Made by a program: the position numbers and the translations under genes. A stretch of 61,628 nucleotides of DNA, the filler included, from Choristocarpus tenellus KU-1152 (lineage: Eukaryota; Protista; Phaeophyceae), in NCBI GenBank assembly GCA_964200185.2. It is 8 parts of 8 records of this genome, joined end to end, with 100 filler letters (N's around TTAATTAATTAA, not from the genome) between each part and the next. Parts side by side here need not be neighbours in the genome. Positions count along the whole stretch, not along the records: positions 1 to 28,772 come from CAXNAD020000118.1; 7 more parts are not named here. One strand, written 5' to 3'. The notes beneath the pieces are model-generated. The model ran no database searches and was not told the DNA's origin. It worked only from the letters and a program-made list of their open reading frames with translations. This document shows, in pieces, positions 6,301 through 24,156 of this stretch; the stretch's first letter is position 1, and each line of letters opens with the position of its first letter.

Positions 6301-7824
6301 CCTTGCAATTTGCGTCTCCTCTTCTCCCTGTGGAAAATGATTTCAGTGTGGAAGGGTGCGTAGGTCTTTTTGAGGTGTTTCCCACTTTGGGGGACTACTT
6401 CGTACTTCACCATAGTTGCTCATGTTCATCTTCATCATATAACATGAAGTCAGATATACAGTGCAGCAATGGATGTGCACTGAAGCGCAAGGGTTGCTTA
6501 TCAATATCGTGTCATGGTCACCATGCAAGTGGCACGTACGAGCATAAATTGGTAGTGAATAACTGCAATGTGGTGTGATCAGCTTGTAAGATACTATGTC
6601 TTGCACCATTTCTGGATAGTGCTACCATACTGTATTGCAGTGAGTATCTCAACATTGGCCATGGTTGCAGTCTTCTCGGACTCTGGTCAACCCTTTTATA
6701 TTTACTCCTATGTTTGCCTTAGTATTAGGTATTGACTGATGGCCAAATTGATGTACAAAAGTGGTTACCTACTCACTACTACTTGGTACATAATCATTCA
6801 CCACTCTGTTCAGTGACATTTCATCAGCCTCCAACTATATTTGTATACATCAATTTCGTTGATCTCTTAACTTGGCAGGGGAAGGTAGAGCCAATGCTCC
6901 ACATCCACATCACACTCCACCAGGGCCTTCATGGGCCCCTAACAGGGACTGGGGCTATGGAGGCACCAGGGGCAGGGGCCAGCATGACGCTTGAGGTGGA
7001 CTTCAAGATTCCTGGGGGAGAAGACACCCATCACCTAAGCATACCATTAGGTGAGACTATCTTATGACTTGCTTGTATTGTGCCAGGTGAATGTTTTAGA
7101 GTTTCCAGAGATTCGGTTCAATCTTGAACTTGACTTTGCACTAGATTAGTGTGTCGCTGATTGATGACTATGGTTACCATTTCATCTTTGCCTGGAAGTA
7201 TCATGAATGAAGCAAAAGAGTTTCTGGTCAATGCCTTCCAAATCTGACACACGTAAGTAAGAATGCACAATAAAGTTCTTTTTCAATTGTATTTTTCTCT
7301 TGATAGGGTTGATTTGGCCTGGTTTTGTGGTTCAAATTTAACATGTAACCGTCTGATTCTTTTTCAAAGAGGTGTCAGCAGAGACTAGTTAATAGTCGAA
7401 TAAATGCATTTCATGGACCTTTCAAAACAACTTCGAACTGTGCCAAATGTTTTGTTAGTAAAAAAATATTAAAAGGCTCATCTCTTGTCCGTTCAATTTT
7501 TTTTCAAACACGAATGCACAGGGTGTGCTCCACCCTTACTTCCACCCTTTCACCTTTATAACTCTCATCTTCACTGTTGTTGCCTGTCACTATGCCTTGT
7601 GCTGCTCATATTTATCTGTCTCAGCTGTTGAAGTTGTACCAGATTCCATGCGCTTTGAAGAACTTCGACCAAGGGGTAGTGGAGCTAGTGGAGAAGATTT
7701 GGAGGCAACTCAGGATGGTGCTGTCAAACTTCGAAATATTGACACTGGAGAAGAGATTGCACTGGAAGAAATAGACAAGCGTGTGCCCCCTGCAATGGAT
7801 CCAAGTCAGCTGTTGAATTTTTGA
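338..7824 (+). CDS. Uncharacterised multi-exon protein, 5' end probably outside the contig; exon model only partly resolved
   Basis: AG/GT-bounded open exons at about 2249-2316 (DTLRRPDIIALMHDTCILDERV), 2838-2896, 3338-3725 (acidic), 4351-4418, 4647-4740, 6879-7050 and 7625-7824 (ends ...VKLRNIDTGEEIALEEIDKRVPPAMDPSQLLNF-TGA). No family recognised. A 13-G run near 4122-4134 makes one exon frame uncertain. Confidence 0.5.
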
Positions 7825-7899
7825 ATGGGAGCCAAGTCATTTAGGAGACAGTTAATACCATTTCGCTTGTGATAGTTCCATATACATCCTTTGTCTTGC

Positions 7900-10800
7900 T
7901 CAACAAGGGAAAAGCCCCTGCAGCATGGGAAGGCTGGCCAGAGTAGCCACCTCTTTTCTCTCTATCTTGAGGTAACGCTTGCGAATGACCTCAAGGTGAC
8001 TTAGAGGCATAGCACTGTGCACTTCATGTAAATCTCGAATGCAAATCTCAAGGTCACACAAGGTGTGCCCTGCTGCCTGACTCAGCCTTGGAGGCCAGTG
8101 TGGTTTCCCTAGTGTGGCTAATGCCAAGACCAAGCAGCTGCTCCCTGTGACTGATGGCTTGAATAGAACAAAATTGAAATGCTGGAGTGAAATCTCAGCC
8201 AAATACAGTGCCAGGTTTCGGATTTGTGACAGTCCTTTGAACTCTGGTACCATCTCCATCATGACATTGAGGAAATCCAAAACTGTTGGAACAGATAGTT
8301 GGAATTGCAGAGTCTTGAGAACCTCCTCTTCCATATCAAGAACATGCTTCGGCTCATACGCACGGCCAGCACAACTAGCTAGGTCCTCGATCCCAATGTA
8401 GGACACATCCTCACACTTGGAAGCCACGTGCAAGCATGTGGCACCCAGGAGCTGAAACTTATTGCGTGGGATTGAAGCCCTGCTGAGAAAACGGTCAGTG
8501 TAGCTCACAGCCAGAAAGGCAGTACGATGGCACATGTCAAATACGTCCACCACCTCCATCAGCCAGTCTACCAGCATAGAACGATGTTCAGCCCTGAATG
8601 ATTGCCTGCCCATGTAATCTGGAAGGGGACAGAGGTCCTCCTCCTGTCTTCGCAGGTAAGTGGCGAAGAGACCAAGGCTCTCTGGTATCCCTGGTGGGAC
8701 ATGGAGCGGTGCAATTGGTGCTGGAACCTGGGATTTGTGCCAAGAGGAGCGAGGGTGATTTGATTGGTAAGGAAAGAAATGAATCAACCACTTCATGTAC
8801 ACAAAGCACATGAATCGGTTCATGATGTCTTGAGGGTTTTGGCTGCTGGCTGAAAGGAAATCAGGCAAAAATGATACTTGCTGACTTGAGATGTGAGGTG
8901 TACAAAAGGTGACCAAGGGATTTTCAACAGTAATACGGACAATGAGCTCTATACCAATTCGTACTTCATCCCGAGCCAAAGCTATAAAAAATGTGAACAT
9001 AGCGGTGATTTTATCTCTCTGTTTTACCTCTATGTTTCACTGTTGGCTGACGAAAAAAAGTGGTGGTACTCTGATAGGAAACTGCAATTGAGAAAGAGAT
9101 TGTAATGATTTGGGTTGAGGCTGGAGGAAGTCATGTGGCGTAAGTCTTGGCCTTGATAGTTACTACTAAAAATACAACTCAAAAGGAAAGGCATTGTATG
9201 TTTACAGTGACAGGGCTTTCGCAACGCAGCTGTCATATCAGCGTGGAAAATTGCCACTTGAAACTAGTTGAAACTGTGAACCCACTAAACCCATGCATGT
9301 TATTCTCTCTTTCAGTGATACCTCATAAAACCTGTTCAAGTTCTACCCACATCATCTCTACCTAGTCCATATGAAATTACCACCAATGATAGTATTACTG
9401 AATGGTGAACACCGAGGATCTGGAAGGTAGACTGTAAGTGGGGAGCCTCTTCAAACCTTAGGCGATGTGGGAGAGAGATCCTGAAGATATGGATGGCGAA
9501 GCGCCTCATGAGCAGTGATGCGTTGGAGAGGATCGTACATTAGGAGACGATCAACCAAGTCCAGACCCAAGGGCTCAAGCCCAACAACAATCTTTGAGAG
9601 GTCTCGCTTAGGCCAGTTGGGGAAGGGCGCACTGTAGTTGGGGAGTTTGACAAATTCTGGCCATGTATCTGTTGTTGGTGTTGCCAGCTTATTGAACACC
9701 TGAAAAAGCTGGTCGATCTGGCTGACTCCAGAGAAGAGAGGCTTCCCCCGTAGCATCTGGACAAAGATGCAACCAACCGACCACATATCAACAGCTGGAG
9801 TGTAGTCCCTAACACCCATCAAAATCTCGGGTGGCCGATACCACAATGTCACGACTTCGCTGGTGTACGTGCGTCGAGGGTAACCTGCCAGCCGAACAAG
9901 AGCAAAATCTGAGACTTTCAGGGTTGCCCCGCTCAGTTTGTTGTCCCCTCTTCCAGGAATAATGAGCAGGTGCTTCGGTTTAAGGTTGCGATGCAACACT
10001 CCCCGGCGGTGGCAGTATGACACAGCTCGTAACAACTGGCGTAGTAAGTCCTTAGCCTGGGCAGAGAAGATATCATAATCGGGGAATTCATTATGGACAA
10101 GTCATTTCGAAGTTGTGCTATATAGGATGAAATATGTTAAGTTCGTGCAGACAAAAGTGCCAAAAAAAATGTGAACACAACTAGATTGTCAGGAACCTCA
10201 TGTTATGCCTTCGAAACATAACGCAAACAAAATTTTCATTTTGTTGTGGATATTACTACCTGCCCAGAAAGATTTAACCAGAACAGTAGTCTCACCGTAA
10301 GGTGGTCCAGTGGTTCGCCGCCATTGCGATCACTCGTGGGGTTAAGGTAGTCGTGGAGAGTGTATTGAATGTAGGGGAAGAATACCCGGAGTTTGGAGTC
10401 GTGCAAGTTGACATGGCACAAAGCCGATACATTCGGATGATCCACTCCCTGTATCGCCAGAAACAAGAACAGGGCATTACTAAAGTGGGTGTACTACAAT
10501 CGCAAGGAAGTTATACTATACAAGAGCATCCCATACAGATCAAGATTACAAAGGAGCTACAAGAGTTGTGACTCTGGCAGCTCACATACTCCATTATTAT
10601 ATGAAGAGGGGAAAGTGAGCCGCTATAAAAGCCAGGAATCACCTTTCTTTCCACCTGGAAGTTCAACGGCACGTCAGGTTGATTTGGGGACAATCCGATC
10701 TAGCACGTACTACATCCATACCTTAAGCGCAGCCAGTTCTCGAAGCATGTAGTAAGGAACTCCCTCACCCTTGGGATAAGCCCTTGCCTTCTTCATCGCG

Positions 10801-11198
10801 TAAATTCGATTCGTCCCTCGGTCCCTACACTGGAAACACACCCCTTCCGTTCCCTCCGCCTTCTTGCCTTGGTTCTCAAAACGGGCCCAGTTAAGCGCAC
10901 CAGTTTCTAGCTCCCACGACGCTTTACTCCAGAGTGCGGTGCTGTTACACGCCTTCTTCCAACATCGCGACACTGCCATGGCTGCTGTGATCGGGGCTTC
11001 ATCAACCGATGCGCTGCTAACGAAGAAGGACAACACCTGCAGTAAGATGTCGAGGTTGCTGGTGGCGTTGTGTCCACCATCACCAGTCCGTTGCCTCAAT
11101 ACACCTTTGTGTCTACTACGACTATGAATTCTTTGTGGATTTTCGTTCTCTTCCCCTAGATCACTGTTCACTGAGGCCAGTTTAGCTCTCTTGACCAT
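7900..11198 (-). CDS. F-box-like + CDK-like (pseudo)kinase + A/B-type cyclin fusion, about 685 aa, 4 exons (11198-10722, 10448-10296, 10056-9457, 8727-7900); alternative in-frame ATG at 11264
   Basis: All three introns are GT..AG and phase 0. Exon 1 has F-box-like LDILLQVLSF..AMAVSRCWKKACNSTALW, then AEGTEGVCFQ, YAMKK and EGVPYYMLRE. Exon 3 has HRNLKPKHLL, DFA, YTSEVVTLWYRPPEIL, DMWSVGCIF and RITAHEALRHPY. Exon 4 has the cyclin box HRSMLVDWLMEV..AVSYTDRFLS..FQLLGATCLHVASKCED..MEEEVLKTLQFQLSVPT and a C-terminal cyclin fold (YLAEISL..FKPS). Confidence 0.8.
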
Positions 11199-11406
11199 TG
11201 TGGACGTCTGAAAGGTGACCTTAATCCCAACAAGAGGAGATGAACAAGACAGACATTTTGGCATGTCATAATCGGGTACACCTATAAAACGGTCATTCTA
11301 ACGATACACAATTAGGGTATATTCTGGTTAAGTTTTTTAGACTATCAAAAAGGGTTGGTTTGTGTAATACACCAGTACATCGTAGTTCGCCTGTATCCCA
11401 TGATCG
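11199..11406. promoter_or_regulatory. Putative bidirectional promoter between the CDK-cyclin fusion and PECT
   Basis: Head-to-head starts about 140-210 nt apart; TATAAAA at about 11283. Inferred from position only. Confidence 0.45.
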
Positions 11407-14400
11407 ATGGGCATCCATGGGATAATCGAGGTTGTACTGGAGTCATATTTGATGTCCCGCCTTGTTGATATTTGTAACTATGTGTTGAGCGCCCTTGGTG
11501 TACCTCCACCTCTTATGGATGCTGAGCAACTTGGGGTATGGATAGCTGCTACGCTCTCAACGCTTGCTTCGTACTACATCTTTTTTGGTAAGAGGCACCG
11601 GCGGAGGCGAAAATACTTGCAGACTGAACTTCGGGATGCACAAATTCGAGTGGCTGTCTTGGAGGAGAAACTCCTAGAGCTAGAAGGAGAGGATGGCACC
11701 GTCAATGGAGGGAAAGAAGTTCGGATTTGGATGGATGGGGCCTTCGACATGATGCATTTCGGGCACATGAATGCATTTAGGCAGGGGAAGGCATTGGGCA
11801 CCTACTTGGTTGTGGGAGTCAACAGCGATGAATCCATCACAAAGTGTAAGGGTCCACCCGTCATGAACGACCAGGAACGGCTGACAGCAGTGGAGGGGTG
11901 CAAGTTCGTTGACGAGGTGGTCCCTGGAGTCCCATACGTGATGAGTGAAGAGTACCTAGAGTACGTCATCGAAAAATATCGTATTGATTTCGTGGTTCAT
12001 GGTGACGATCCTTGTATCGTGGATGGCAAGGATGTGTACGCCGCAGCCAAGGCCAAGGGGAAGTACCGCACCATACCTCGTACAGAGGGTGTGTCCACTA
12101 CTGACATTGTGGGGAGGATGTTGTTGTGCAATAAGAGCCACCATTCGCACAGCGCAGAGGGGGGGAAGATTCCACACCTGGCATCCTTCAAGAAGTGAGT
12201 TTACGTACTTACGACGAGGTCACTACTCTCTGTCACCTGAGGCCTGGGCGATGTTGATGTAGGGGCGTTCTGTCTAGAAGTCTAGGATCCGTAGTCCATT
12301 GCAAGTTTGAGTGCAAGTTTGTATATGCAAGGAGAGTTTGGGTCAAGTTGGTGGATTTATTAGCGATGTGTTTGCCAGGTATCCAGAGTATGGAAAAACA
12401 AATCCTGGAGTTTCAGCATTCGCACTATTTGTTCTGTCTGTGGAGCATTGTGTAGTATCACCGGCCCTGGTTATGCTTCAAAATCAGGTAGTTACCACAC
12501 ATGGCTTCCAGCAATACTGAGCAGGCTGCTAATCCAGCCTCCTCTGTTTTGTCCCTGTTTACCCTCCTTAATGCAGGAATGGCCTCTCCCATGTTCGATC
12601 AAAGTTCCTTACGACTTCCTGGATGCTTCGCCTATTCTCAGGTGGTGTGAAGGCACCACCAAAAGGTGCACGTGTTGTGTACATCGATGGTGAGAAATAT
12701 TCTCAAGAGTTGACTTTCTCGAGCTGAAACACTACTACGAACCACTGACATATTTCCATACTTTTGATAAAGGGGGCAAACCTTGGTGCTCTGCTAAATA
12801 CTGGACACGAGCGATTGCCAGACATGAATTCTGATCTTCTCCTTCCCCAAACCCATGAAAACGCTGTTGCGGAAGGTGCATGGGACATGTTCCACGCAGG
12901 ACATGTAGGTGTGCTTAAGAAGGCACAAGAATTTGGTGACTACGTGATTGCTGGAGTCCACAGTGATGAGGTGGTCAATGCACAGCGAGGTCTTAACATG
13001 CCTATCATGAACCTCAATGAACGAGTACTCAGTGTCCTAGGCTGTGTATATGTCAATGATGTCCTCATTGATGCTCCACTTGATCTCACGAGGTGAGTTG
13101 ACTGTTGACTGCAGCTGATCCTGCGTGTAAGTTAGGTTACAGACAATTCACGCCCCTGAGAAATACTCATTTGTTTGGTTGTGTATCCTCACGAAGGTCA
13201 AAAGGATGAAAAAAAAATGAGGAGTTAGCATTTAAATGCCACATGCCTTGTGTATTCGAGTAGGGTTTACACTTACGTGGGATGGGAATTGAATAATTGG
13301 TTGGATTGCCACTGCAGTGATGTAGTGTATGCTTAAGACTACTGAGTTGTTTTGTAGTTGCATATACTTTGATTGTCTCATACTGTCCCTCCTATTGTAA
13401 TATTTCGTTTTTTCTACTAACGTAACTGTCAATCACCGTGCTTTGTTATGGCAGGGAAATGATGGCATCACTCAATATCTGTGCTGTTGTGCATGGAACC
13501 GTGGATGACAACAAAAGCGCTGTAGAATGTGAGATGGCTAGTGAAACATAACATGCAGATTGCCTAGGGGAGCAGTGCAATCGATTTGATACAGTGTGTA
13601 GCGTTTATGGCAGCTTTCAAGCGTACTTGTTTTGCACCTACCTTTCAATACGTTCATTGCAACAGGTGCGCACTATCTGTGCCACTAAAAGACAGATGTG
13701 AATATGTTGTCTTATCTCTGTTTACTACATTGAAGAGTAATGTATACAGCTGAAGCAATATTTTGCATTGTAGATGGTACCATGAATGTACCTGTTGAAA
13801 TTGGGCCCCATATAGTGGTAATACACAGGACTATGCACACATGAGTCTTGTATGCCTTTGAGTTACTGTGGTATAGAAGGATATGGAGTGTCAAGATTAC
13901 AGGACTGATGGATCGAAAAGTGTTGTATTCAAAGACACTTATCAGTAGTTTGTAATTATCCAAAACAATACAATACAATAGTGACCAGGGGCGAGTCGAA
14001 GCAATTTATAGCTACGTTCATGCATATGTGTTGCCTGATTGAAAAAAGAGATACCACAGGTTTCCAAACCTGATCTCAGGCGTTTTGAGATTACGTGGCC
14101 AATGCCCTTTGTCCCAAATGTAAAGTTTGTTATTAGTTTAAATTGTTGGAAACCATGAATGCAAGGTGGGCATCGTGTAAATTGTGTGTCCCTGGTGTAG
14201 AGGGTGTAACACCATGAACCTCTATGTACCGGACAACAACAGATGAGTTCCTACTAAGTATCAATGAGAGAAGTGCACTCGCAACTCTTTTCCCAGTAGA
14301 GGACAGGAATAGCACTGGTGGGAGTGCACCAAGCGTATCTATACTTTGCACTGGAGGACCTGTCTATTTAGAATATTTCTGAAGTGGTGTGGTTAGAAGC

Positions 14401-15460: not shown

Positions 15461-18400
15461 TCACATGTCTTCATCAGAGGAGGCCTGCCTCTTGGAAGGG
15501 TGTTGTGCTTCCTCATCACTTTCCCACTTCCGCTTCCCACCTTCATCCTCCAAATTTCCTCCCACTTCCTCCTCAGAATCATCACTGCTTGACGACAATC
15601 CTATGTCCTTGAGGTTTGCAGATACAGTGGACAATGATCCACTCACAACGTTTTCTGTCCCATTTTCTCCCCTACCAGTTGCATCACCGTAACGATCAGC
15701 CTGTCCTGTATCATCTTCCCCATTGTCTGATTGGATGTCCCCCTCATCTCCTGACTCACTTTCATACTGAGGGGCGTGATCAGTCGATTGTTCACGGCCT
15801 CGTTTTGGATCAGGTTTGCTTACATGAGTCCACGCCTCCTGCAGTTTAGTGAGACTGGCCTGCTTCACTTTGGCACGTTCCTGGCGTTGCACGGCGCGGT
15901 TAGCCTGCCTCACCCGCTCATCTTCCTCCTCCCGCTTCCGCTGTTGCACCATCTGAGTTAAGTAAGATGAGAGAGAGGTTAGAATCTCCTCAGTAGGTGC
16001 ACATCCTTAGGTGAAACAGAAAATCCAAATTCCTGACATTTTCTCCTGGTTCTCTTGTGAGTCGATTGACACGGATGGGATGGGTCACTTCCGCCTCACC
16101 TTTTCCAATGCGAGTTGGTGCCTTTCCCGGACTGTCTGCTGCTGGTCCGCCTTGATCTTTTCATGGCTCAGGTGTTGGTCAGCGCGCTCAATGTTGTCAA
16201 AGCAGAACTTGGCATGCTTCTCTGCCTTGTTTGAATCAAATGGTAAGCGGCGATGAGACCCTCCGGTCTTGTCTGGCTCGCACTGTGTGAGCCAATTGAA
16301 CAGCTTGGTGGCACCCTGTTGGGTTCCACGCAGCAGAATGTATTGAGTCAGGGTCAAAAGAGGTGCTACCGTCACCAATACACTATCATAGACTTTACAA
16401 GAACAGAATTGAATCCTCTTACTGGTAGCTGCAAGAAGATTGTGTACCTTCAGATCCTTGATGGCATTCTCCACCTCTGTGAGTGTTCGAGCTTCGCCCT
16501 TCTGCTCCTTTTGCAAGACCGCCACAGCGAAGGTCTCACGGGTAAGGGCAAGGTTGTACCACAACTGAAGGTTATTGGGTGATACATGAAGAGCCTTGAG
16601 CAGAGTCTGCATGCACTCTCTGTACTGACGGGCATCAAAGTATGCATGGGCAAGGTAGACATGGACGCTTGCTTCCCTACCCCCATGGAACTTCTTGAGG
16701 CAATTCTGGTAGAGACGAATTGCCTGTGGGAAGAGAGGTGTGGTTGTTTCAACTGTTGTCAGGTCAGGTCAAGCACCATCTGCATCGTTGGTCTGGGAAA
16801 GGTGCTTGAAACGACAAAGAACTTGACCATCTAATCAAGAAATTGAAGATACCAGCAATACCACTCTAAACCAGGGCCTGGAATGTCATCCTTACGTAGA
16901 ATGGGTGTTCTCTGTGGGCAGAGGGAATCAACTTACTGAAAGGCTTCATGTATGTCCTATAGATGGATTACAGACAGTAATGTAGCGTAACACTGTATCA
17001 ATAATACTACTAGCACTGTATTGTACTGCATTACAATTAGTACATCTGGTAGGGCTAGTTATTCAGAAGAGATGTGACCTGATACAACGCTTGCTCCCAA
17101 GGTAGGATTATCCTTAAACTCTCCTCTATCACTGGTACTTATCGAGCATATTTGATTGGTGTAGCCTTACAGTACTGCCACTAGACAAACTACAATAGCA
17201 GGCAAGGTATTTGTATGATACACATAACCAGGGTTTGTCGCAGTAGTGACCACAGCAGTAATGATTAGATATGTGGAAGTATATTATACCATACCGTGAT
17301 CTACCTTAGGACTTTGACTACTACAATGGGTACAGTGCTCTACCATGGAAATGCCATTGATAATAAAAAAGAAATAGACTCTCTACTGTAACATACAGAG
17401 ATATTGAAGTATTTTCAATGTAATATTACACACTGTATCATTATTGTTGCGTGTATGTCAAGCAGGAGTACCATGACTCACATGCCCATGGCTCAATGGT
17501 TAAGGAAATTGGCCCCTGTATAAATTGTACGAGGTCAACTCCTATGAACGCCAGACTACTTCTCATGGAAATATCACTTCAATCATAGAAAACCCATGTG
17601 GCAAGATGAGGCAACTCCAGCACAAGATTCCAGGGCACCATTGAAAACAGTGGAACTAGACTTTTAAACATGATTCAGTTTAGCCAGTGTTACATATTGG
17701 TTAAGAAAGAAACCATTAACAGGTTATGCAAATATCAGAAAATGTGGACAAGATATTCTACACTTTTCTACCTCCAAGGGCAAACACTGACCAGTGTTAG
17801 AGACTGTAGATAATACTGTGAGAGGTTGTTACATTGTTGTACTTAAAGTTGAAGCAAGAGAGGGTAAGAGAGTGCAAGTACCATCTGGATACCTGTCACT
17901 ATGGTTACTCATTGATACACCATTGTGCAATACTATCTGTCGAGTTACATGAGGCAAAAAGACATCGACATCTACCAGAACATTTTGTAACAACTTACAT
18001 CAATTATTGTCACCATGATATTCCAATACTTCTACAACTCCTGTCATGGAATTGAAGCACTAATCGCAACAAAAATGGTGTAACATCACACCACTCTGCA
18101 GGCTGATGATTTAATAGTTGGCAGAAACCGAGACATTTCTGGATTAGTGAGCACCCTGGTACAAAAAAGGCTCTCATTCAATAAATCCTTGCACAAAACC
18201 ATGACACTGCCAACACCACACAATTCAACTATCAAAAACTAATGGAATCACCGTACTATACTGTGCCATTCAAATTTTAAAAAAATACTCTTGAGAAAAA
18301 ACGCCGTACTGTATCATGATGTTTCCAAAAGTGGCCAATACTCTACTGAAATGTGAAATCATTCCCGAGAATAAGTCTTTGACAAATCAGTAGACAATTC

Positions 18401-21400
18401 TGCAATGTGGGGTTCTACTCACATACAAATATGTAAACCAACTAAATTTTTCTGATGCACCTCATGCCAACGGCAACGAGTCAGCATTTTTTTATATTTA
18501 TATATAGATATATACTGTTGTTATGGTTCACTTACTGGCAAAGAGCTGGAACTATTGAAAGGGTCTATGGAGGTCTACAAACATTTATGTCTAATAGTGT
18601 ATGGCATGTAAAAGCTTGTACAGAAAGAACCTAATAGGAGTCACTTTTGCTGTTTTACTCTCACCTCATTGTGTTTGTTTTGAGCCAAATACACATGAGC
18701 TAGATTAATCCACACATCTGCCAAAACCTCTGCAGAGATCTCCCTCACCCTAGCAAACACGTCCTTTGCTTGATCCAACATGCCTTTCTCAGCTAGAACC
18801 ATTCCCAATCCATTAGCTGCAGTGGAATCAGTGGGAAATGGGAGGGAGAGGCTGTGCTTCAATTTGTTTAAAAAACAAGAACCGCATTGCTCTACATTGA
18901 AATATCATAGGGAATGAAAGACATCTTGCTTTGGTTGTGTGTGTGACACCCTGCTCACAAACTGAGTGTCACAACTACATTTTGAGATGATAACTTCACA
19001 AACGATCACACATTCCTCAGAAGTACAATGCTCAACGAGGACACAAAGCTCAACATCATCAGCTAGAAGACAATACAGCAACTAAACAAAGGTTTGCAGG
19101 ATGACCAACATGAATAAGCAACCCTACCTGCCCAACGGTGTAACCCTCACCTGCAAAGGCATTTGCATCATCCTCCTTTAGCACTTCTTGATAGAAATTT
19201 GCAGCGTACTGAAGGTGCTTCTCATATTTTGTCCGGTCCTCCAAGTTGCTGAAGTAGATATTGCCTAATGAAAGCATTGCATAGCTGTCTCCACGGAGAG
19301 TTGGCTACAGGGGTGGGAAAACTACATGGTTGATCACATGTAGAAGTAACCGTCATACAATGAACACAAGGTACCAGAAAAATCAACACCGGGAAAGAAA
19401 ATCTTGAGGGGTGTTCAAAGTGGGCATTTATTTTCTCTTGAAAAAGCACACAACCACTCTTGTGAATCTTGTCCAAATCATCACGGGCAATGGAGGCATC
19501 AACAGTCAACTATCACCCACCAGGTCAAGTATCATCTCGAATTTCTTCTGTGCTGGGCCCCACTCCAGGTTGCGCATGTGAAGGTTGCCAATGTATGCCA
19601 GGATATCTGGATTCTCGCTGTCAATGTCCAATGCCTGCTTGAACCACTTGCTTGCCTCATGAATCTGCCCAGAGTCTCTGGCAATGCTGCCCAGTCGAAG
19701 GTAGCCTAGGGGAAGGAATGGAGGCAAATTGTAATAATCAACAAACCCTCCCAAAACCAATAAAACAATCAGTCTAACAGGGCCTGGCTACAAACTTCAC
19801 TTTTCTTATCCCTATTGCAGCACACAATTTCATTGCAGCAAATCATCGCTCATTAACTATCAAGGCTCTCCCTCACTGTGAACATAAGTAGGGTGTTCCG
19901 CTAGTATCGCCTTGTGGAGCTCCTGTGCGGCCTCATGGTGCCCCTGCTTCTCGTGAAGTAATGCCAGATTGAACGTTACTGACACCTTTTCCTTTGTAAT
20001 TCGGTTCTTTCGCGTCTTCTTGTACAACCTCCCCTCCACCGGCGGGCTGTCCTTATCTGCAAGTGCAACATCAGCCACTTCAAACTCTCCATCTTTTTCA
20101 GTCCCCTGCGCAGTTGACACAAAACTGCTGCCAACACGCACCTGCACACCCTTCCGTACAGCTCCTCCAAGCGATGCTGATGTTTGTACCATGCGAGAAC
20201 CTCCAACTAACGTAGCCATCGCAGGAAGCTCCTTCCACTCCCAGAAGAGTGGGTTAGCAGGATCAGTCACCCTTAGAACAGACTCTGTATCCCCAGTCTC
20301 CTCCACAGTTGCCTGACTAGGCCTGCCCTGCTCCAGTGCTTGTTCGTAAGCATTTCTTGCCTCCACAGGGTTGCCAACCCGCTCGTGCAAGACCGCAATG
20401 TTGGTCCATGCAGCTTGACCTGTTTGCCATTGGCGGCCATCTCTGTGTATCCTTTCCCCCCCACCTGAGCTGTCATTGCTTAGAGCACTGCTGGTATTGT
20501 TCCCTTCAGCTGATGATACTCCTAGGCCCCTGGTGTAAGAGGAGAGGGCCAGCTGATGATCTACAGAATCCTCCTGTAGCACCTGGTGTCCAGAGGATGA
20601 AGCAAACAATCACACTATCGGTTCAAATCATGGTACACAGCACCAACTCAAGGCACCTAAAGGAACATACAGCACGAGGAGCATGTAGCAAAGGTTGACA
20701 ACAATACCTGTGCTTGGGCAATCCATGCATCTGAAAGATTGGGATTAAGCTCCAAAGCCCTCTTGAACTTTGCCAAGGCCAATGGACGCTGCTTGTTTTT
20801 TGCATGCAGCATTCCCAGCAACACCAAGGCCTCCTGCAGTATACCAGAAGGCACGCTTGAAAGGTGAGAGATGTGGTGAGACAGAAAACCACATTTTGAT
20901 GGAGAAGATACGAGCAAGAAACCCTGTACATCTCTTTCTCAAGTACCTCTACTGTTTACGACCTTGAAAGGCAAAGAAAGCATAACATCTAGGGTCCGTC
21001 CAAACTCACACGCAACTCAGCAGGTATCCAAACTCAATCCGCCATCTTCGAGGTGGAAGCTGCAACACAATAGCAACAATCTGGGCTCTGATATGTTATC
21101 CCTAAATCACCATTGAGTGAAAGTCTCCATGTTGCTTACCTGGCTATCAGGAACCTCTGCCAGTACTGCATTAAGTGCGTTCATGGCAGGAGTAATGTCG
21201 CCATCAAAGACAAGCATTTGAGCCATTCCATATTGAGCAAGAGCAAACCTTGGCCAGAGTTTGCATGCCTCCACATATTTGACCTTTGCCTCGCTGAATT
21301 TCCCCTTTGCATGGTACACTCTTGCCCTGAGATAGCAACTCTCTGCTTTAATCTCAGCAGTTGAGGTGTTGTCATAGGCTTTGCCTGCCAGCTCCAACAC

Positions 21401-24156
21401 CTGCCTTGTCGGGAGAGTACTAAGGTTGAGACACTGAAAAACAGGCGGTTTTCAGGCCCATTCACCGGACTGGCAAATGAAAATGATCTCTTCCAGGGGT
21501 CAGACCGGCCCCACAATTATCCAACATGTCCTGGTCCATTTCCACTAGATATTGTACCACTCAATGTCAACCAACTGGACTAGGACTGACTTTCTCAAAC
21601 AACTCAAGACCATGCCCAACAGATATTGTACTCATCAATGTCCACAGGCTGAAGTGGGTCTAAATTTTTCTAACATGTTTGCTGGCTGGGCAAACTTTGT
21701 CTGACATGTCCACACCATGTCCACTTCGCTTTGTACTAGTTCAGTCCACGACCAGTCACAGACCCAGACCAAGGAGATAAACATAGGGCTGAAAGTAACA
21801 GATAACGGTATGAACTATTGGATTTATATACCATCAACATACCATCATTGGTATACAGATTGGTGGTATACCTTAAAACGCTATACCAATTCGTTGATCT
21901 TTCCACACATATCTGGTTGGCAGGAATCTCGAGTTTGTCTTCAAAATCGGTGCACCAATGATTTTTTGGCTACATTTACTTCCCTACCCAGATCATAGAT
22001 TATCACAACCACCTAAACATAGTTCATTACACCATTCCTTAAGGTATAGTGTAGCTGCCAAAGTCTACCAAACCCAAAAAATATATCCGTATAAAATATA
22101 TATATAGAAAGAGAAAGCAACCAACTACTACTACATACACAGAACTGTTGAACTATTTACTATTTGGAGTGAATGGGTCCATGTAGCATGCCATGATATG
22201 ACTGTGTGTCAAATGAGGTTTACCTTGACGGTCATAAGCAAAATCTTCTGGCATGCCAGGGTCCATGACCATCACTACTTCAATATGGTCGGGTCACCAG
22301 CTGGCTCTGTAATAATAAATTTAAACATGGCCAAGTCCATGGTCATCATTGCTGTAATAAAGACAGGCCGCTGGTCGGCCCTGCACAACCAAGTTTGAAC
22401 ATGGCCGAGCCCATGACCATCAACTGTTTCAACATGGCGGGCTCATGGGTCAGTCCACAGTCATATGGCCAACGGTTGACATGCTAACTGCCCAGCCTGG
22501 TGAGCGGGCTTAGTTTCCCAAGTATAAAGAGTGCAGCTATCTAGTTTCCACTTTCAAGTTGCAAATTGATGACTGCAATCAGCTACATGTTGACTGCTCC
22601 ACGTATCCAATTCAGGCAAACAAATGACTCACCTTCTCATACTCCCTCCTGTAGAATTTCAGCCCAACTCCAGACAATCCAGAGTAGGATTCTTTAAGTG
22701 GAAGCCTCATCCCTTCCACTCCACCATCACCTACAGCAGTAACAAAGGTGGGTCCAATCCGGATAGCATCTCCAGCACTAAGGATGCCATAAATGTCTGC
22801 GCTCAAAATTGCTGTTCGTGACCCCTCTTCTACACTAACTGTGCCCTTCAGTTGTGACCAACTCCAGAAGTAATGGTTTGCAAGATGGTTGAGAACCATG
22901 GAGTTGGTGCTATCCACATGATATGCCGTGCTTATAGTATTGATAGCATTCTCGGTTCGTATAGCCACATCAGGCGAGTCTCGGGCCAGAGTTGACAAAT
23001 CCAGAATGGCGGTGCCAACTAAGGCCTGGATATTTTGGGGGTCTAGCTCTAGGGCCCTCATCATGGCTGCTTTCGCCCTACTCACTTGGCCCAGCTTGTA
23101 ACAGCAAAGTCCAAAGCCCACTCGGATGGATGCAGAGCACCTTGGGTTCAGACGAATGGCTTCACTGCTCAAGTCCCGTCAACAGCGTAACAAACAAGAC
23201 AAGTGGGTAGTTTAATTAGACAGTCCAGGGGATGTGCTAACAGGAAAACCAATGATAAATTGATCTCATTGCAGCTTTTCCCGAACATGCCAACCTCCGC
23301 AACCCAGTCCTCGGCAAGGATGGACAACTTTGTGACCTCCCTAGTGAAACTGTGTTACTTTCAAACACAATAAAGAGCACAACAAATATATCACCTGTAA
23401 AGCTCCAGCGCCTGCTCATAGTTTCCGTGATGAAAGCTGATTGCTGCTTCGCCTAGGGTAGCAGGAAAGTTTTTCCTCTTTTTCCGTGCATTTTCGAAGA
23501 AGTACTTCGCCCTGTCAAGCTCGCCCTGACTTAGATAGAAAACCCCCTTCCCTACCCATGTAAGTTCCGACATGTTGTCGATGCGGTCTGCACTAGTAAG
23601 ATGATCAAGCGCCTCCAAGAACTGGTTATCCCTCGCGATTCCTTCCCTGCAGGAAGATGCGCGCTTCACTGCATCAGCAGCAAGAGCATTGAGGATTCGG
23701 ATTCGACCTACCTCGAAGGCCTTCATATCGTCCGAGTAGTACTGTTCAGTTTGGGGGTTTAGTGCGACAATGATCTCATTCAGGATTGCTCGGAAGTGGC
23801 CTTCCAGCCCTTGCCGATGATATTCCACCTAAAAGGGGACCCAGGACGAGATAGTGAGAGTACCAAGATTAGAGGTGGGTTCATGATGGGACCAAAACAA
23901 ATGGTCTGATCTCAAAAAGCCGCCATCACAACATAATATTAGCCGAACTGTTAAGTCAATAAGTATCTTAGACACTCACAGCAAATCGTAGCCAAATATC
24001 CAGCGGAGCTATCTCAGCTTTCAGCACATCCACAACATCGTTGTAGTCATTGGGCAGCTCGTCTGTGTATACCTCAACCCTCTGTTCTGCACCCCTCACG
24101 GGGATTCTAATGCACCTGTCATCCACCTCATCGTCACTTCTCGGTGACATAGACAT
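15461..24156 (-). CDS. CTR9: RNA polymerase-associated protein CTR9 (PAF1 complex TPR subunit), 12 exons (24156-23980, 23828-23395, 23164-22633, 21400-21140, 20833-20708, 20582-19877, 19705-19521, 19304-19151, 18816-18665, 16723-16448, 16315-16100, 15952-15461)
   Basis: N-terminus [36 protein letters not shown]; also [75 protein letters not shown] and [10 protein letters not shown]. Multiple TPRs and an acidic tail. All introns are GT-AG with consistent phase. Confidence 0.93.
22250..22520. repeat. Degenerate intronic repeat with short subrepeats inside CTR9 intron 3
   Basis: ACATGGCC.AG.CCATG..CATCA-like units recur several times. Confidence 0.4.

What the first reader, a model, noticed from the sequence alone, without database searches (positions are those of the whole stretch)
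7900..11198. Single gene fusing F-box, CDK and cyclin: a self-contained cell-cycle/ubiquitin module
Seen: four exons splice in frame through three phase-0 GT-AG introns. The kinase exon ends ..SPTSPK at AAG|GT (9457) and joins VPAPIAPLHVPPG.. after a pyrimidine-rich CCCAG acceptor (8727), giving a Pro-rich linker between a CDK1/2-like domain and a full A/B-type cyclin. Established: CDKs and cyclins are normally separate proteins whose association is the regulated step. Inference: this ~685-aa protein is a permanently paired CDK-cyclin with an SCF-docking N-terminus. The ORF track shows it as four unrelated ORFs. I cannot confirm whether homologues are already described.
Basis: partly seen in the sequence, partly recalled or inferred. 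Interest (0 to 1): 0.92.

Follow-up and report, generated by a model that had tools for sequence, protein, structure and literature searches.

The report
F-box, dead-CDK, cyclin fusion gene
This brown-alga gene really does join an F-box, a CDK-like kinase and a cyclin in one 685-residue protein, but the kinase lacks its catalytic residues, and this kind of fusion was published in 2010, so it is a real, uncharacterised member of a known family.

Summary
Four minus-strand exons (11198-10722, 10448-10296, 10056-9457, 8727-7903) are joined through three GT-AG introns. One contig of public run X3 (depth 151) skips exactly these introns, including the disputed 729-base one between kinase and cyclin. 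The NCBI protein P0182 (Choristocarpus tenellus, 685 aa) equals the four exons end to end.

The kinase is CDK1/2/3-like, but it reads HRN instead of HRD, His instead of the metal-binding Asn, DFA instead of DFG, and Glu at Tyr15. Of 104 fetched relatives that carry kinase then cyclin in one chain, 86 have exactly this HRNLKPKH loop and none has HRDLKP. It is therefore probably a pseudokinase, not a permanently active CDK.

The kinase-cyclin fusion with this Asp-to-Asn change was published for Phytophthora in 2010 (PMC3019232) and noted in Stentor. Databases already name relatives "cyclin-dependent kinase with F-box domain" or "Cyclin-F".

Models dock the dead kinase on its own cyclin in the canonical way (ipSAE 0.76, best control 0.35; AlphaFold2 pTM 0.88). 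My best reading, which is inferred, is a cyclin-F-like SCF substrate receptor. Interest is moderate to low.

The parts
10722..11198 (-). Exon 1 (residues 1-159): disordered N-terminus, F-box, kinase N-lobe up to the PSTAIRE-equivalent helix
   Evidence: ORF and sequence. Pfam F-box-like plus the start of Pkinase. The spliced contig covers 11080-10721. Equals P0182 residues 1-159. The ATG at 11198 follows the NCBI model; an in-frame ATG at 11264 lies upstream, and neither is covered by the transcript contig.
10923..11063 (-). F-box-like region (about residues 46-92)
   Evidence: Pfam F-box-like, residues 50-92, 23.6 bits against a cut-off of 24.3. A profile of this region from 32 relatives hits the Skp2 F-box at E 1e-7, and all 44 matches with E up to 0.14 are F-box proteins or carry an F-box. 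In the AlphaFold2 model it forms helices 46-56, 67-74, 78-84 and 87-90 at pLDDT about 90.
10722..10769 (-). PSTAIRE-equivalent helix GEGVPYYMLRELAALK (residues 144-159)
   Evidence: Aligned to the PSTAIRE helix of CDK3 and CDK1. It is the core of the predicted contact with the cyclin domain: residues 144-147, 149, 152-153, 155-157 and 159.
10449..10721 (-). Intron 1, 273 bases, GT..AG, phase 0
   Evidence: Skipped by the X3 contig.
10296..10448 (-). Exon 2 (residues 160-210): kinase N-lobe strands and hinge
   Evidence: Equals P0182 residues 160-210. Relatives hit it by tblastn. Covered by the X3 contig.
10057..10295 (-). Intron 2, 239 bases, GT..AG, phase 0
   Evidence: Skipped by the X3 contig.
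9457..10056 (-). Exon 3 (residues 211-410): kinase C-lobe and the start of the Pro-rich linker
   Evidence: Pkinase 1.5e-36. Best solved relatives are CDK3, CDK1 and CDK2, E 1e-81 to 1e-72. Covered by the X3 contig.
9970..9993 (-). Catalytic loop HRNLKPKH (residues 232-239): Asn replaces the catalytic Asp, His replaces the metal-binding Asn
   Evidence: Read from the sequence. Aligned to HRDLKPQN of CDK3 and CDK1. Invariant in 40 aligned relatives. The exact motif is in 86 of 104 fused proteins and HRDLKP in none.
9901..9909 (-). DFA in place of DFG (residues 260-262); the Asp is kept
   Evidence: D260, F261 and A262 are invariant in 40 relatives.
8728..9456 (-). Intron 3, 729 bases, GT..AG, phase 0. 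Its first six bases read GTT TGA, so an unspliced message would end the protein just after the kinase domain.
   Evidence: Skipped by the X3 contig at depth 151. Intron-internal contigs (8730-8939 and 9171-9432) reach depth 2.8-3.5 only.
7900..8727 (-). Exon 4 (residues 411-685 plus the stop at 7902-7900): rest of the linker, then the cyclin
   Evidence: Cyclin_N (window 8293-8661) 1.1e-37 and Cyclin_C (window 7936-8289) 2.7e-21. Best solved relative is cyclin A2 at 5e-37, then cyclin B1 at 8e-27. Equals P0182 residues 411-685.
7623..7899 (-). Likely 3' untranslated region
   Evidence: The X3 contig runs on to 7623. Contigs carry no strand, so part of this stretch may belong to the convergent plus-strand neighbour (ORF 7525-7824).

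Best explanation
Shown: this is one expressed gene of the brown alga Choristocarpus tenellus. It encodes a 685-residue protein with an N-terminal F-box, a CDK1/2/3-like kinase domain, a short Pro-rich linker and a cyclin-A/B-like double cyclin fold. It belongs to the published family of 'CDKs with integral cyclin domains'. Most members of that family also carry the F-box.

Inferred from sequence: the kinase domain is a pseudokinase. The catalytic Asp and the metal-binding Asn are replaced (HRNLKPKH), DFG reads DFA, and Tyr15 is Glu. The ATP-site Lys, the helix Glu, the DFG Asp and the T-loop Thr are all kept, so it may still bind nucleotide and hold an active-like shape.

Supported by models only: the dead kinase sits on its own cyclin through the canonical PSTAIRE-helix to cyclin-box interface, giving one rigid body.

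Inferred mechanism: the protein works like cyclin F, as the substrate-receptor subunit of an SCF ubiquitin ligase. The F-box would bind Skp1, and the locked pseudo-CDK-cyclin body would be the recognition module. Recognition could use the largely conserved cyclin docking patch (HRSMLVDW..E for MRAILVDW..E), and perhaps the surfaces that bind Cks or CDK inhibitors. Targets would then be ubiquitylated rather than phosphorylated.
For: Gene and splicing.

Family: the best hits to the cyclin exon among 1.84 billion cluster representatives are proteins of about 500-1000 aa with Pkinase followed by Cyclin_N and Cyclin_C. Among fetched proteins, 104 have kinase then cyclin in one chain, 86 with HRNLKPKH and none with HRDLKP. 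All 45 fused cyclin domains lie on one side of a branch (SH-aLRT 98) away from 52 stand-alone cyclins. The family was published in PMC3019232 and noted in Stentor.

Pseudokinase: residue-by-residue alignment to CDK3 and CDK1, and the invariant columns.

F-box: 10 of 17 relatives match F-box-like, best E 1.7e-10. The family profile hits the Skp2 F-box at 1e-7, and every match with E up to 0.14 is an F-box protein or carries an F-box. Skp1 is present in this genome.

Docking: ipSAE was 0.76 in three runs against a best control of 0.35. That mark was reached by 51 of 78 solved complexes and 2 of 108 mismatched pairs. The runs agree in at least 92% of contacts, and the partner's pLDDT is at least 84. 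The contacts run from the PSTAIRE-equivalent helix and the T-loop to cyclin residues around K514 and E543. The full-length AlphaFold2 model has pLDDT 88.2 and pTM 0.88, with only residues 2-45 disordered. Its kinase part best matches CDK2 chains taken from cyclin-bound complexes, TM 0.91-0.94.

Cyclin F as precedent for an F-box cyclin that acts as an SCF receptor and activates no CDK: PMC9699750.
Against: No experiment bears on function. This protein's own F-box score is just under Pfam's cut-off, and Skp1 binding was not tested. CDK2-cyclin A is among the most often solved complexes, so the docking pass may reflect memory of that likeness rather than real binding.

Loss of the canonical residues predicts inactivity but does not prove it, since some atypical kinases work without them (my own knowledge). 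No target is known. The docking patch is changed at two positions (Met to His, Ile to Met). The run with the spliced contig is not on record as RNA, and the contig does not reach the start codon.
Confidence: 0.55

Rival explanations
1. One reading: an active, self-activating CDK-cyclin in one chain. The kinase would be permanently switched on by its tethered cyclin, with the F-box governing its turnover or location.
For: The architecture is real. The canonical interface is predicted. Lys33, Glu51, Asp145 and Thr160 equivalents are kept. Giant-virus kinase-cyclin fusions with an intact HRD loop show that such a design exists in nature.
Against: The catalytic Asp is Asn and the metal-binding Asn is His, in this protein and in 86 of the 104 fused relatives, and none carries HRDLKP. 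The first glycine of the Gly-loop is lost and Tyr15 is Glu. Judelson and Ah-Fong reached the same 'probably inactive' conclusion.
Confidence: 0.08
2. A decoy or sponge. The dead CDK-cyclin body would soak up regulators of real CDKs (CDK inhibitors, Cks, Wee1 or CAK, or proteins with RxL motifs) without ubiquitylating them. The F-box would serve only to make the decoy itself unstable and cell-cycle timed.
For: The pseudokinase features and the conserved T-loop Thr and docking patch fit this. Judelson and Ah-Fong suggested that the cyclin domain might regulate the protein's stability.
Against: The F-box is conserved from oomycetes to brown algae and labyrinthulids. That fits a working SCF adaptor better than a simple degradation tag. 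Nothing tested here separates the two readings.
Confidence: 0.2
3. A trans-acting cyclin. The cyclin domain would activate a separate, genuine CDK, and the tethered pseudokinase would be an autoinhibitory plug that is released on a signal. The F-box would then couple an active CDK to SCF for phosphorylation-primed ubiquitylation.
For: The cyclin keeps the CDK-contacting Lys and Glu (K514, E543). The linker is flexible (pLDDT about 71-73).
Against: The intramolecular arrangement is predicted with high confidence (pTM 0.88, ipSAE 0.76). The PSTAIRE-equivalent helix of the pseudokinase is itself strongly conserved in the family, which suggests a lasting pairing.
Confidence: 0.12
4. Two neighbouring genes (a CDK ending at SPKV-stop and a separate cyclin) wrongly merged by gene prediction, or a spliced contig that comes from a retrocopy rather than from RNA.
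For: A TGA lies one codon after the donor site. The 729-base intron is three times longer than the other two. Run X3 is not on record as RNA.
Against: One contig at depth 151 crosses all three joints at GT..AG ends, while the intron interior is at depth about 3. The genome has a single locus for the kinase exon. About 100 relatives carry the same fusion, among them intron-poor oomycete genes confirmed by RT-PCR.
Confidence: 0.02

Closest known systems
Phytophthora infestans 'CDKs with integral cyclin domains' (four genes, among them PITG_21617; Judelson and Ah-Fong 2010, PMC3019232)
   Same: A CDK2-class kinase followed by Cyclin_N and Cyclin_C in one chain. The same catalytic Asp-to-Asn change in subdomain VIb. 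The fusion is confirmed on transcripts. Oomycete relatives are among the best hits, at 45-50% identity.
   Different: That paper does not mention an F-box (0 occurrences) and reported no diatom members. This one is from a brown alga, has three introns and is single-copy in its genome, whereas P. infestans has four copies.
Stentor coeruleus CDKs with C-terminal cyclin domains (SteCoe_2757; bioRxiv 10.1101/168187)
   Same: [quoted passage not shown]
   Different: It is a ciliate protein, no F-box is reported, and its relation to this gene was not tested here.
Animal cyclin F (FBXO1), substrate receptor of SCF(cyclin F)
   Same: An F-box at the N-terminus and a cyclin-A-like cyclin domain towards the C-terminus. 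Cyclin F activates no CDK and acts in ubiquitylation (PMC9699750). UniRef's automatic name for many oomycete relatives is 'Cyclin-F'.
   Different: Cyclin F has no kinase-like domain between the F-box and the cyclin. Common descent was not tested here, so the likeness may be convergent.
Skp2-Cks1-CDK2-cyclin A assembly on SCF (solved, e.g. PDB 7b5l)
   Same: An F-box protein physically joined to a CDK2-cyclin A body. The family's F-box profile is most similar to Skp2's F-box, the kinase to CDK1/2/3 and the cyclin to cyclin A2.
   Different: There it is four separate proteins with an active CDK2. Here it is one chain with a dead kinase, no LRR domain, and no evidence for Cks.
Canonical CDK2-cyclin A
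   Same: The folds and the predicted interface are the same: the PSTAIRE helix and T-loop against the first cyclin fold.
   Different: The two parts are covalently linked, the kinase lacks its catalytic residues, and an F-box is added.

Membership tests
CDK with integral cyclin domains (Judelson and Ah-Fong 2010) | Kinase domain followed by Cyclin_N and Cyclin_C in a single polypeptide, confirmed on transcripts | tested here: met
   Pfam exon by exon. A spliced contig crosses the kinase-cyclin joint. P0182 equals the four exons.
CDK with integral cyclin domains (Judelson and Ah-Fong 2010) | Catalytic Asp of subdomain VIb replaced by Asn | tested here: met
   HRNLKPKH at residues 232-239, aligned to HRDLKPQN of CDK3 and CDK1. 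Invariant in 40 relatives.
CDK with integral cyclin domains (Judelson and Ah-Fong 2010) | Sequence kinship with the oomycete members in both domains | tested here: met
   Profile hits at E around 1e-270 to 1e-290, including Phytophthora, Aphanomyces, Saprolegnia and Albugo proteins. The fused cyclin domains form one group, SH-aLRT 98 (quick tree).
F-box proteins (SCF substrate receptors) | F-box motif of about 45 residues | tested here: met
   This protein alone scores 23.6 bits, just under Pfam's 24.3. The family profile hits the Skp2 F-box at 1e-7, and all 44 matches with E up to 0.14 are F-box proteins or carry an F-box. 10 of 17 relatives match F-box-like. The model shows a short helical bundle at residues 46-90 with pLDDT about 90.
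F-box proteins (SCF substrate receptors) | Binds Skp1 and assembles with Cul1 and Rbx1 | not tested
   Skp1 is encoded in the genome.
Active cyclin-dependent kinases (CDK1/2/3 class) | Catalytic-loop Asp (HRD) and metal-binding Asn (HRDLKPxN) | tested here: not met
   Asn234 and His239 occupy these positions. No fused relative has HRDLKP.
Active cyclin-dependent kinases (CDK1/2/3 class) | ATP-site Lys33, helix Glu51, DFG Asp145, T-loop Thr160, intact GxGxxG | tested here: inconclusive
   The Lys (YAMKK), Glu (PYYMLRE), Asp (DFA) and Thr (RTYTSE) are kept. The Gly-loop reads AEGTEG, so its first Gly is lost and Tyr15 is Glu.
Active cyclin-dependent kinases (CDK1/2/3 class) | Overall sequence and fold of a CDK, and a cyclin-binding surface | tested here: met
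   CDK3, CDK1 and CDK2 at E 1e-81 to 1e-72. Foldseek TM 0.91-0.94 to cyclin-bound CDK2. The predicted interface runs through the PSTAIRE-equivalent helix (a model only).
A/B-type cyclins | Two cyclin folds (Cyclin_N and Cyclin_C) with the CDK-contacting Lys and Glu | tested here: met
   Pfam 1.1e-37 and 2.7e-21. Cyclin A2 at 5e-37. K514 is invariant and E543/E544 nearly invariant, and both regions lie in the predicted interface.
A/B-type cyclins | MRAIL docking patch | tested here: inconclusive
   It reads HRSMLVDWLMEV where cyclin A2 has MRAILVDWLVEV. Arg, Leu, Trp and Glu are kept, while Met becomes His and Ile becomes Met. Peptide binding was not tested.
A/B-type cyclins | N-terminal destruction box and APC/C-dependent turnover | not tested
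   The place of a normal cyclin's N-terminal region is taken by the kinase domain. No motif search was made.
Cyclin F (FBXO1) orthologues | Common descent with animal cyclin F | not tested
   Only an automatic UniRef name links them. No animal cyclin F sequence was available by reference to put in the tree.

The most novel reading that the evidence does not exclude
The family is a one-chain SCF substrate receptor whose recognition module is a catalytically dead CDK clamped on its own cyclin. That would put the Skp2-Cks1-CDK2-cyclin A arrangement, or cyclin F, into a single polypeptide. It would be widespread in stramenopiles and present in some alveolates, and it would pick out CDK substrates or CDK inhibitors for destruction instead of phosphorylation. 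The F-box part of this reading was not found in any paper searched.
Probability: 0.35. Interest if true: 0.6.

Novelty: new member of a known kind. Interest (0 to 1): 0.35.

Why it matters
CDK and cyclin are the textbook example of a kinase controlled by reversible binding of a partner. A lineage-wide protein that ties the two together, kills the kinase and adds an F-box suggests that the CDK-cyclin shape has been reused as a recognition device for ubiquitylation.

If that holds, it would link the two main engines of cell-cycle control in one molecule. It would also give a handle on cell-cycle regulation in brown algae and oomycetes, some of which are major crop pathogens and in which these proteins are uncharacterised.

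As it stands, the fusion and its dead kinase have been in print since 2010 and the gene model is already in NCBI. This report adds three things: a brown-alga member with transcript support, the family-wide F-box, and structure predictions of the intramolecular pairing.

Tried and rejected
- Two-gene model (kinase ending at TGA 9453-9451, separate cyclin). Rejected by the spliced contig and the fused relatives.
- Retrocopy as the source of the intron-less contig. Rejected: there is one genomic locus only, and the intron pieces are present at about 2% of the exon depth.
- RNA runs. No run is on record as RNA. X3 behaves as RNA, but being contigs it cannot show transcript ends, so the 5' end stays open.
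- Paper searches combining F-box, cyclin and pseudokinase with stramenopiles, and 'cyclin F' with oomycetes or brown algae, found nothing beyond PMC3019232 and the Stentor preprint.
- Viral origin of this gene. Not supported: giant-virus kinase-cyclin fusions are only 24-34% identical, keep HRD and showed no F-box (Pfam on two of them), whereas this gene has introns and cellular neighbours.
Exons were searched one by one by reference. Full-length work used the database protein P0182, which a search returned and which proved identical to the four exons.
- A first count on the cyclin tree needed 8 label changes. The 8 'solo' rows inside the fused group are fragments, or fused proteins that lack the exact motif I used as a label.
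Full report
**What is there.** On the minus strand, four open stretches are in phase across three introns that begin GT and end AG:
- exon 1: 11198-10722
- exon 2: 10448-10296
- exon 3: 10056-9457
- exon 4: 8727-7903, followed by the stop at 7902-7900

Scanned one by one against Pfam, they give:
- exon 1: F-box-like (E 4.4e-5, 23.6 bits, cut-off 24.3) and the first strands of a protein kinase
- exon 3: Pkinase, 1.5e-36
- exon 4: Cyclin_N 1.1e-37 and Cyclin_C 2.7e-21

The kinase frame runs GTT TGA straight after the third donor site. The rival reading, a CDK ending there with a separate cyclin gene downstream, therefore had to be taken seriously.

**Transcript evidence.** Three public runs hold the stretch; none is on record as RNA. 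Laid on 7400-11700, X1 and X2 carry the unspliced DNA, and X1 may be the source of the assembly. X3 has one 2217-nt contig at mean depth 151. It covers 7623-8724, 9454-10055, 10295-10447 and 10721-11080, with skips of 729, 239 and 273 bases whose ends read CT..AC on the plus strand. With the tool's cut offsets these are exactly the predicted joints. Contigs inside the 729-base intron have depth 2.8-3.5.

The genome holds only one locus for the kinase exon, so a retrocopy does not explain the contig. The kinase-to-cyclin splice is therefore real and dominant in that sample.

Two limits remain. X3 only behaves like RNA. Its contig stops at 11080, so codons 1-39 and the choice between the ATG at 11198 and an in-frame ATG at 11264 are unsupported.

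**Identity of the gene.** A family-profile search returned P0182, 'unnamed protein product [Choristocarpus tenellus]', 685 aa, on a contig of 28772 nt, which is the length of this piece. P0182 is the exact end-to-end sum of the four exons. Full-length analyses used P0182 by reference.

**The family.** The cyclin exon was searched against 1.84 billion cluster representatives. Its best hits are proteins of about 500-1000 residues with the match at their C-terminus. Nine of the ten I scanned carry Pkinase before Cyclin_N and Cyclin_C, and four of them show a weak F-box match. They hit all four exons in order, and the first three blocks end exactly at or within a few codons of the predicted exon edges.

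Of 258 proteins fetched, 104 have kinase then cyclin in one chain. Of those, 86 contain exactly HRNLKPKH and none contains HRDLKP.

Named members come from many oomycetes, from brown algae (Discosporangium), and from Tribonema, Phaeothamnion, Chrysoparadoxa and the labyrinthulid Hondaea. There are single entries labelled Durusdinium and Batrachochytrium salamandrivorans. Source names include 'cyclin-dependent kinase with F-box domain' and UniRef's automatic 'Cyclin-F'.

In a quick maximum-likelihood tree of cyclin domains, all 45 fused ones lie on one side of a branch (SH-aLRT 98), apart from 52 stand-alone cyclins. The 8 other rows on their side are fragments, or fused proteins that lack the exact motif. 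This fits one origin of the fusion within this sample. The giant-virus fusions were not in the tree.

**What is already published.** Judelson and Ah-Fong (2010, PMC3019232) described four P. infestans CDKs with C-terminal Cyclin_N and Cyclin_C and confirmed them by RT-PCR. They noted that all have the catalytic Asp of subdomain VIb replaced by Asn and 'may be enzymatically inactive'. They found relatives in other oomycetes, in ciliates and in Theileria, but not in two diatoms. [quoted passage not shown] Neither paper mentions an F-box, and my other searches found no paper that does.

**The kinase domain.** Its nearest solved relatives are CDK3, CDK1 and CDK2 (E 1e-81 to 1e-72). Against them:
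- Changed: the Gly-loop reads AEGTEG for GEGTYG (first Gly lost, Tyr15 to Glu); HRDLKPQN is HRNLKPKH (catalytic Asp to Asn, metal-binding Asn to His); DFG is DFA.
- Kept: the ATP-site Lys (YAMKK), the helix Glu (PYYMLRE for PSTAIRE), the DFG Asp and the T-loop Thr (RTYTSE).
- All these positions are invariant or nearly so in 40 relatives.

My inference is a nucleotide-pocket-bearing but catalytically dead CDK held in shape by selection.

**The cyclin domain.** It is closest to cyclin A2 (5e-37), then to B1. The CDK-contacting Lys and Glu are conserved: K514 is invariant and E543/E544 nearly so. The docking patch reads HRSMLVDWLMEV for MRAILVDWLVEV, so it is largely but not fully kept.

**The F-box.** This protein alone falls just short of Pfam's cut-off. 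However, 10 of 17 relatives match F-box-like, best E 1.7e-10. A profile of the region from 32 relatives hits the Skp2 F-box at 1e-7, and all 44 matches with E up to 0.14 are F-box proteins or carry an F-box. Skp1 is encoded in this genome. Binding to Skp1 was not tested.

**Do the two halves pair?** I ran a complex prediction of P0182 100-405 against 425-685. It gave ipSAE 0.76 in three runs against a best control of 0.35. That mark was reached by 51 of 78 solved complexes and by 2 of 108 mismatched pairs. The runs agreed in at least 92% of contacts, and the partner's pLDDT was at least 84.

The contacts are those of a canonical CDK-cyclin pair. On the kinase side they are the PSTAIRE-equivalent helix (144-159), residues 172-177 and the T-loop (266-269). 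On the cyclin side they are residues 427-434, 511-523 and 536-564.

CDK2-cyclin A has been solved hundreds of times, so this pass shows likeness and may come from memory. It does not prove binding.

A full-length AlphaFold2 model built with 40 relatives has mean pLDDT 88.2 and pTM 0.88, with only residues 2-45 disordered. Its kinase part best matches CDK2 chains taken from cyclin-bound complexes (TM 0.91-0.94).

**How it most likely works.**
- Shown: one spliced gene, three domains, membership in a conserved family, and loss of the catalytic residues.
- Modelled: a rigid intramolecular CDK-cyclin body.
- Inferred: the protein is a cyclin-F-like SCF substrate receptor. [quoted passage not shown] Here the F-box would bind Skp1, and the dead CDK-cyclin body would recognise targets.

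The rivals are a decoy that titrates CDK regulators, a cyclin that acts in trans on a real CDK with the pseudokinase as a plug, and an active self-paired CDK. I rank the last lowest because of the invariant HRN and His.

**Verdict.** This is a new brown-alga member of a known, published family, not a new kind of system. The family-wide F-box and the SCF-receptor reading appear in database names but in no paper I could find, and that is where any remaining interest lies.

**Seen in passing.** Giant-virus contigs encode shorter kinase-cyclin fusions that keep HRD.

Noticed in passing
L005:2932-4518 (+) and L008:2995-4425 (+), IMG/VR giant-virus contigs of 405 kb and 1.47 Mb: Nucleocytoviricota contigs encode single-ORF kinase-cyclin fusions of 528 and 476 aa (Pkinase plus Cyclin_N by Pfam). 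They keep an intact HRDLKP/HRDLKS catalytic loop, and L008 also keeps DFG. Pfam found no F-box. They are only 24-31% identical to this gene. The ESM Atlas also lists viral clusters of 55-67 members with Pkinase plus Cyclin_N. A 2023 review of giant-virus cell-cycle genes does not mention such fusions.
   Followed up: partly
window 9451-9456 and intron 8728-9456: The third intron begins GTT TGA in frame. A message that keeps it would encode an F-box-pseudokinase protein without the cyclin. In run X3, intron-internal contigs are at depth about 3 against 151 for the spliced form.
   Followed up: partly
window 11081-11331: No X3 contig covers the first 39 codons, the annotated ATG (11198), the upstream in-frame ATG (11264) or the 209-base gap to the divergent neighbour. 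The spliced contig ends at 11080 without a loose end, so the transcript's 5' end and the true start codon are open.
   Followed up: no
window 11407-12198 (+): The divergent neighbour has a cytidylyltransferase-like domain (CTP_transf_like, 7.7e-21), by eye like ethanolamine-phosphate cytidylyltransferase. It starts 209 bases from the F-box gene's ATG. An X3 contig lies on it at depth 174.
   Followed up: partly
window 7525-7824 (+) and 7623: A convergent plus-strand ORF with no Pfam match overlaps the presumed 3' UTR. One X3 record has 28 loose letters before 7623. This may be a splice joint of that neighbour, or the point where two convergent transcripts were merged in one contig.
   Followed up: no
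window 19860-23828 (-), perhaps from about 15460: Several minus-strand ORFs carry TPR repeats (TPR_1, TPR_2, TPR_19). They probably belong to one multi-exon TPR protein gene. The acidic, Ser-rich ORFs at 15461-16612 may be its tail.
   Followed up: partly
P0225 (labelled Batrachochytrium salamandrivorans BASA81) and P0197 (Durusdinium trenchii): Family members carry labels from a chytrid fungus and a dinoflagellate. The ESM Atlas also lists a chlorophyte cluster with F-box plus Pkinase but no cyclin. The range beyond stramenopiles, and possible contamination of those assemblies, was not examined.
   Followed up: no
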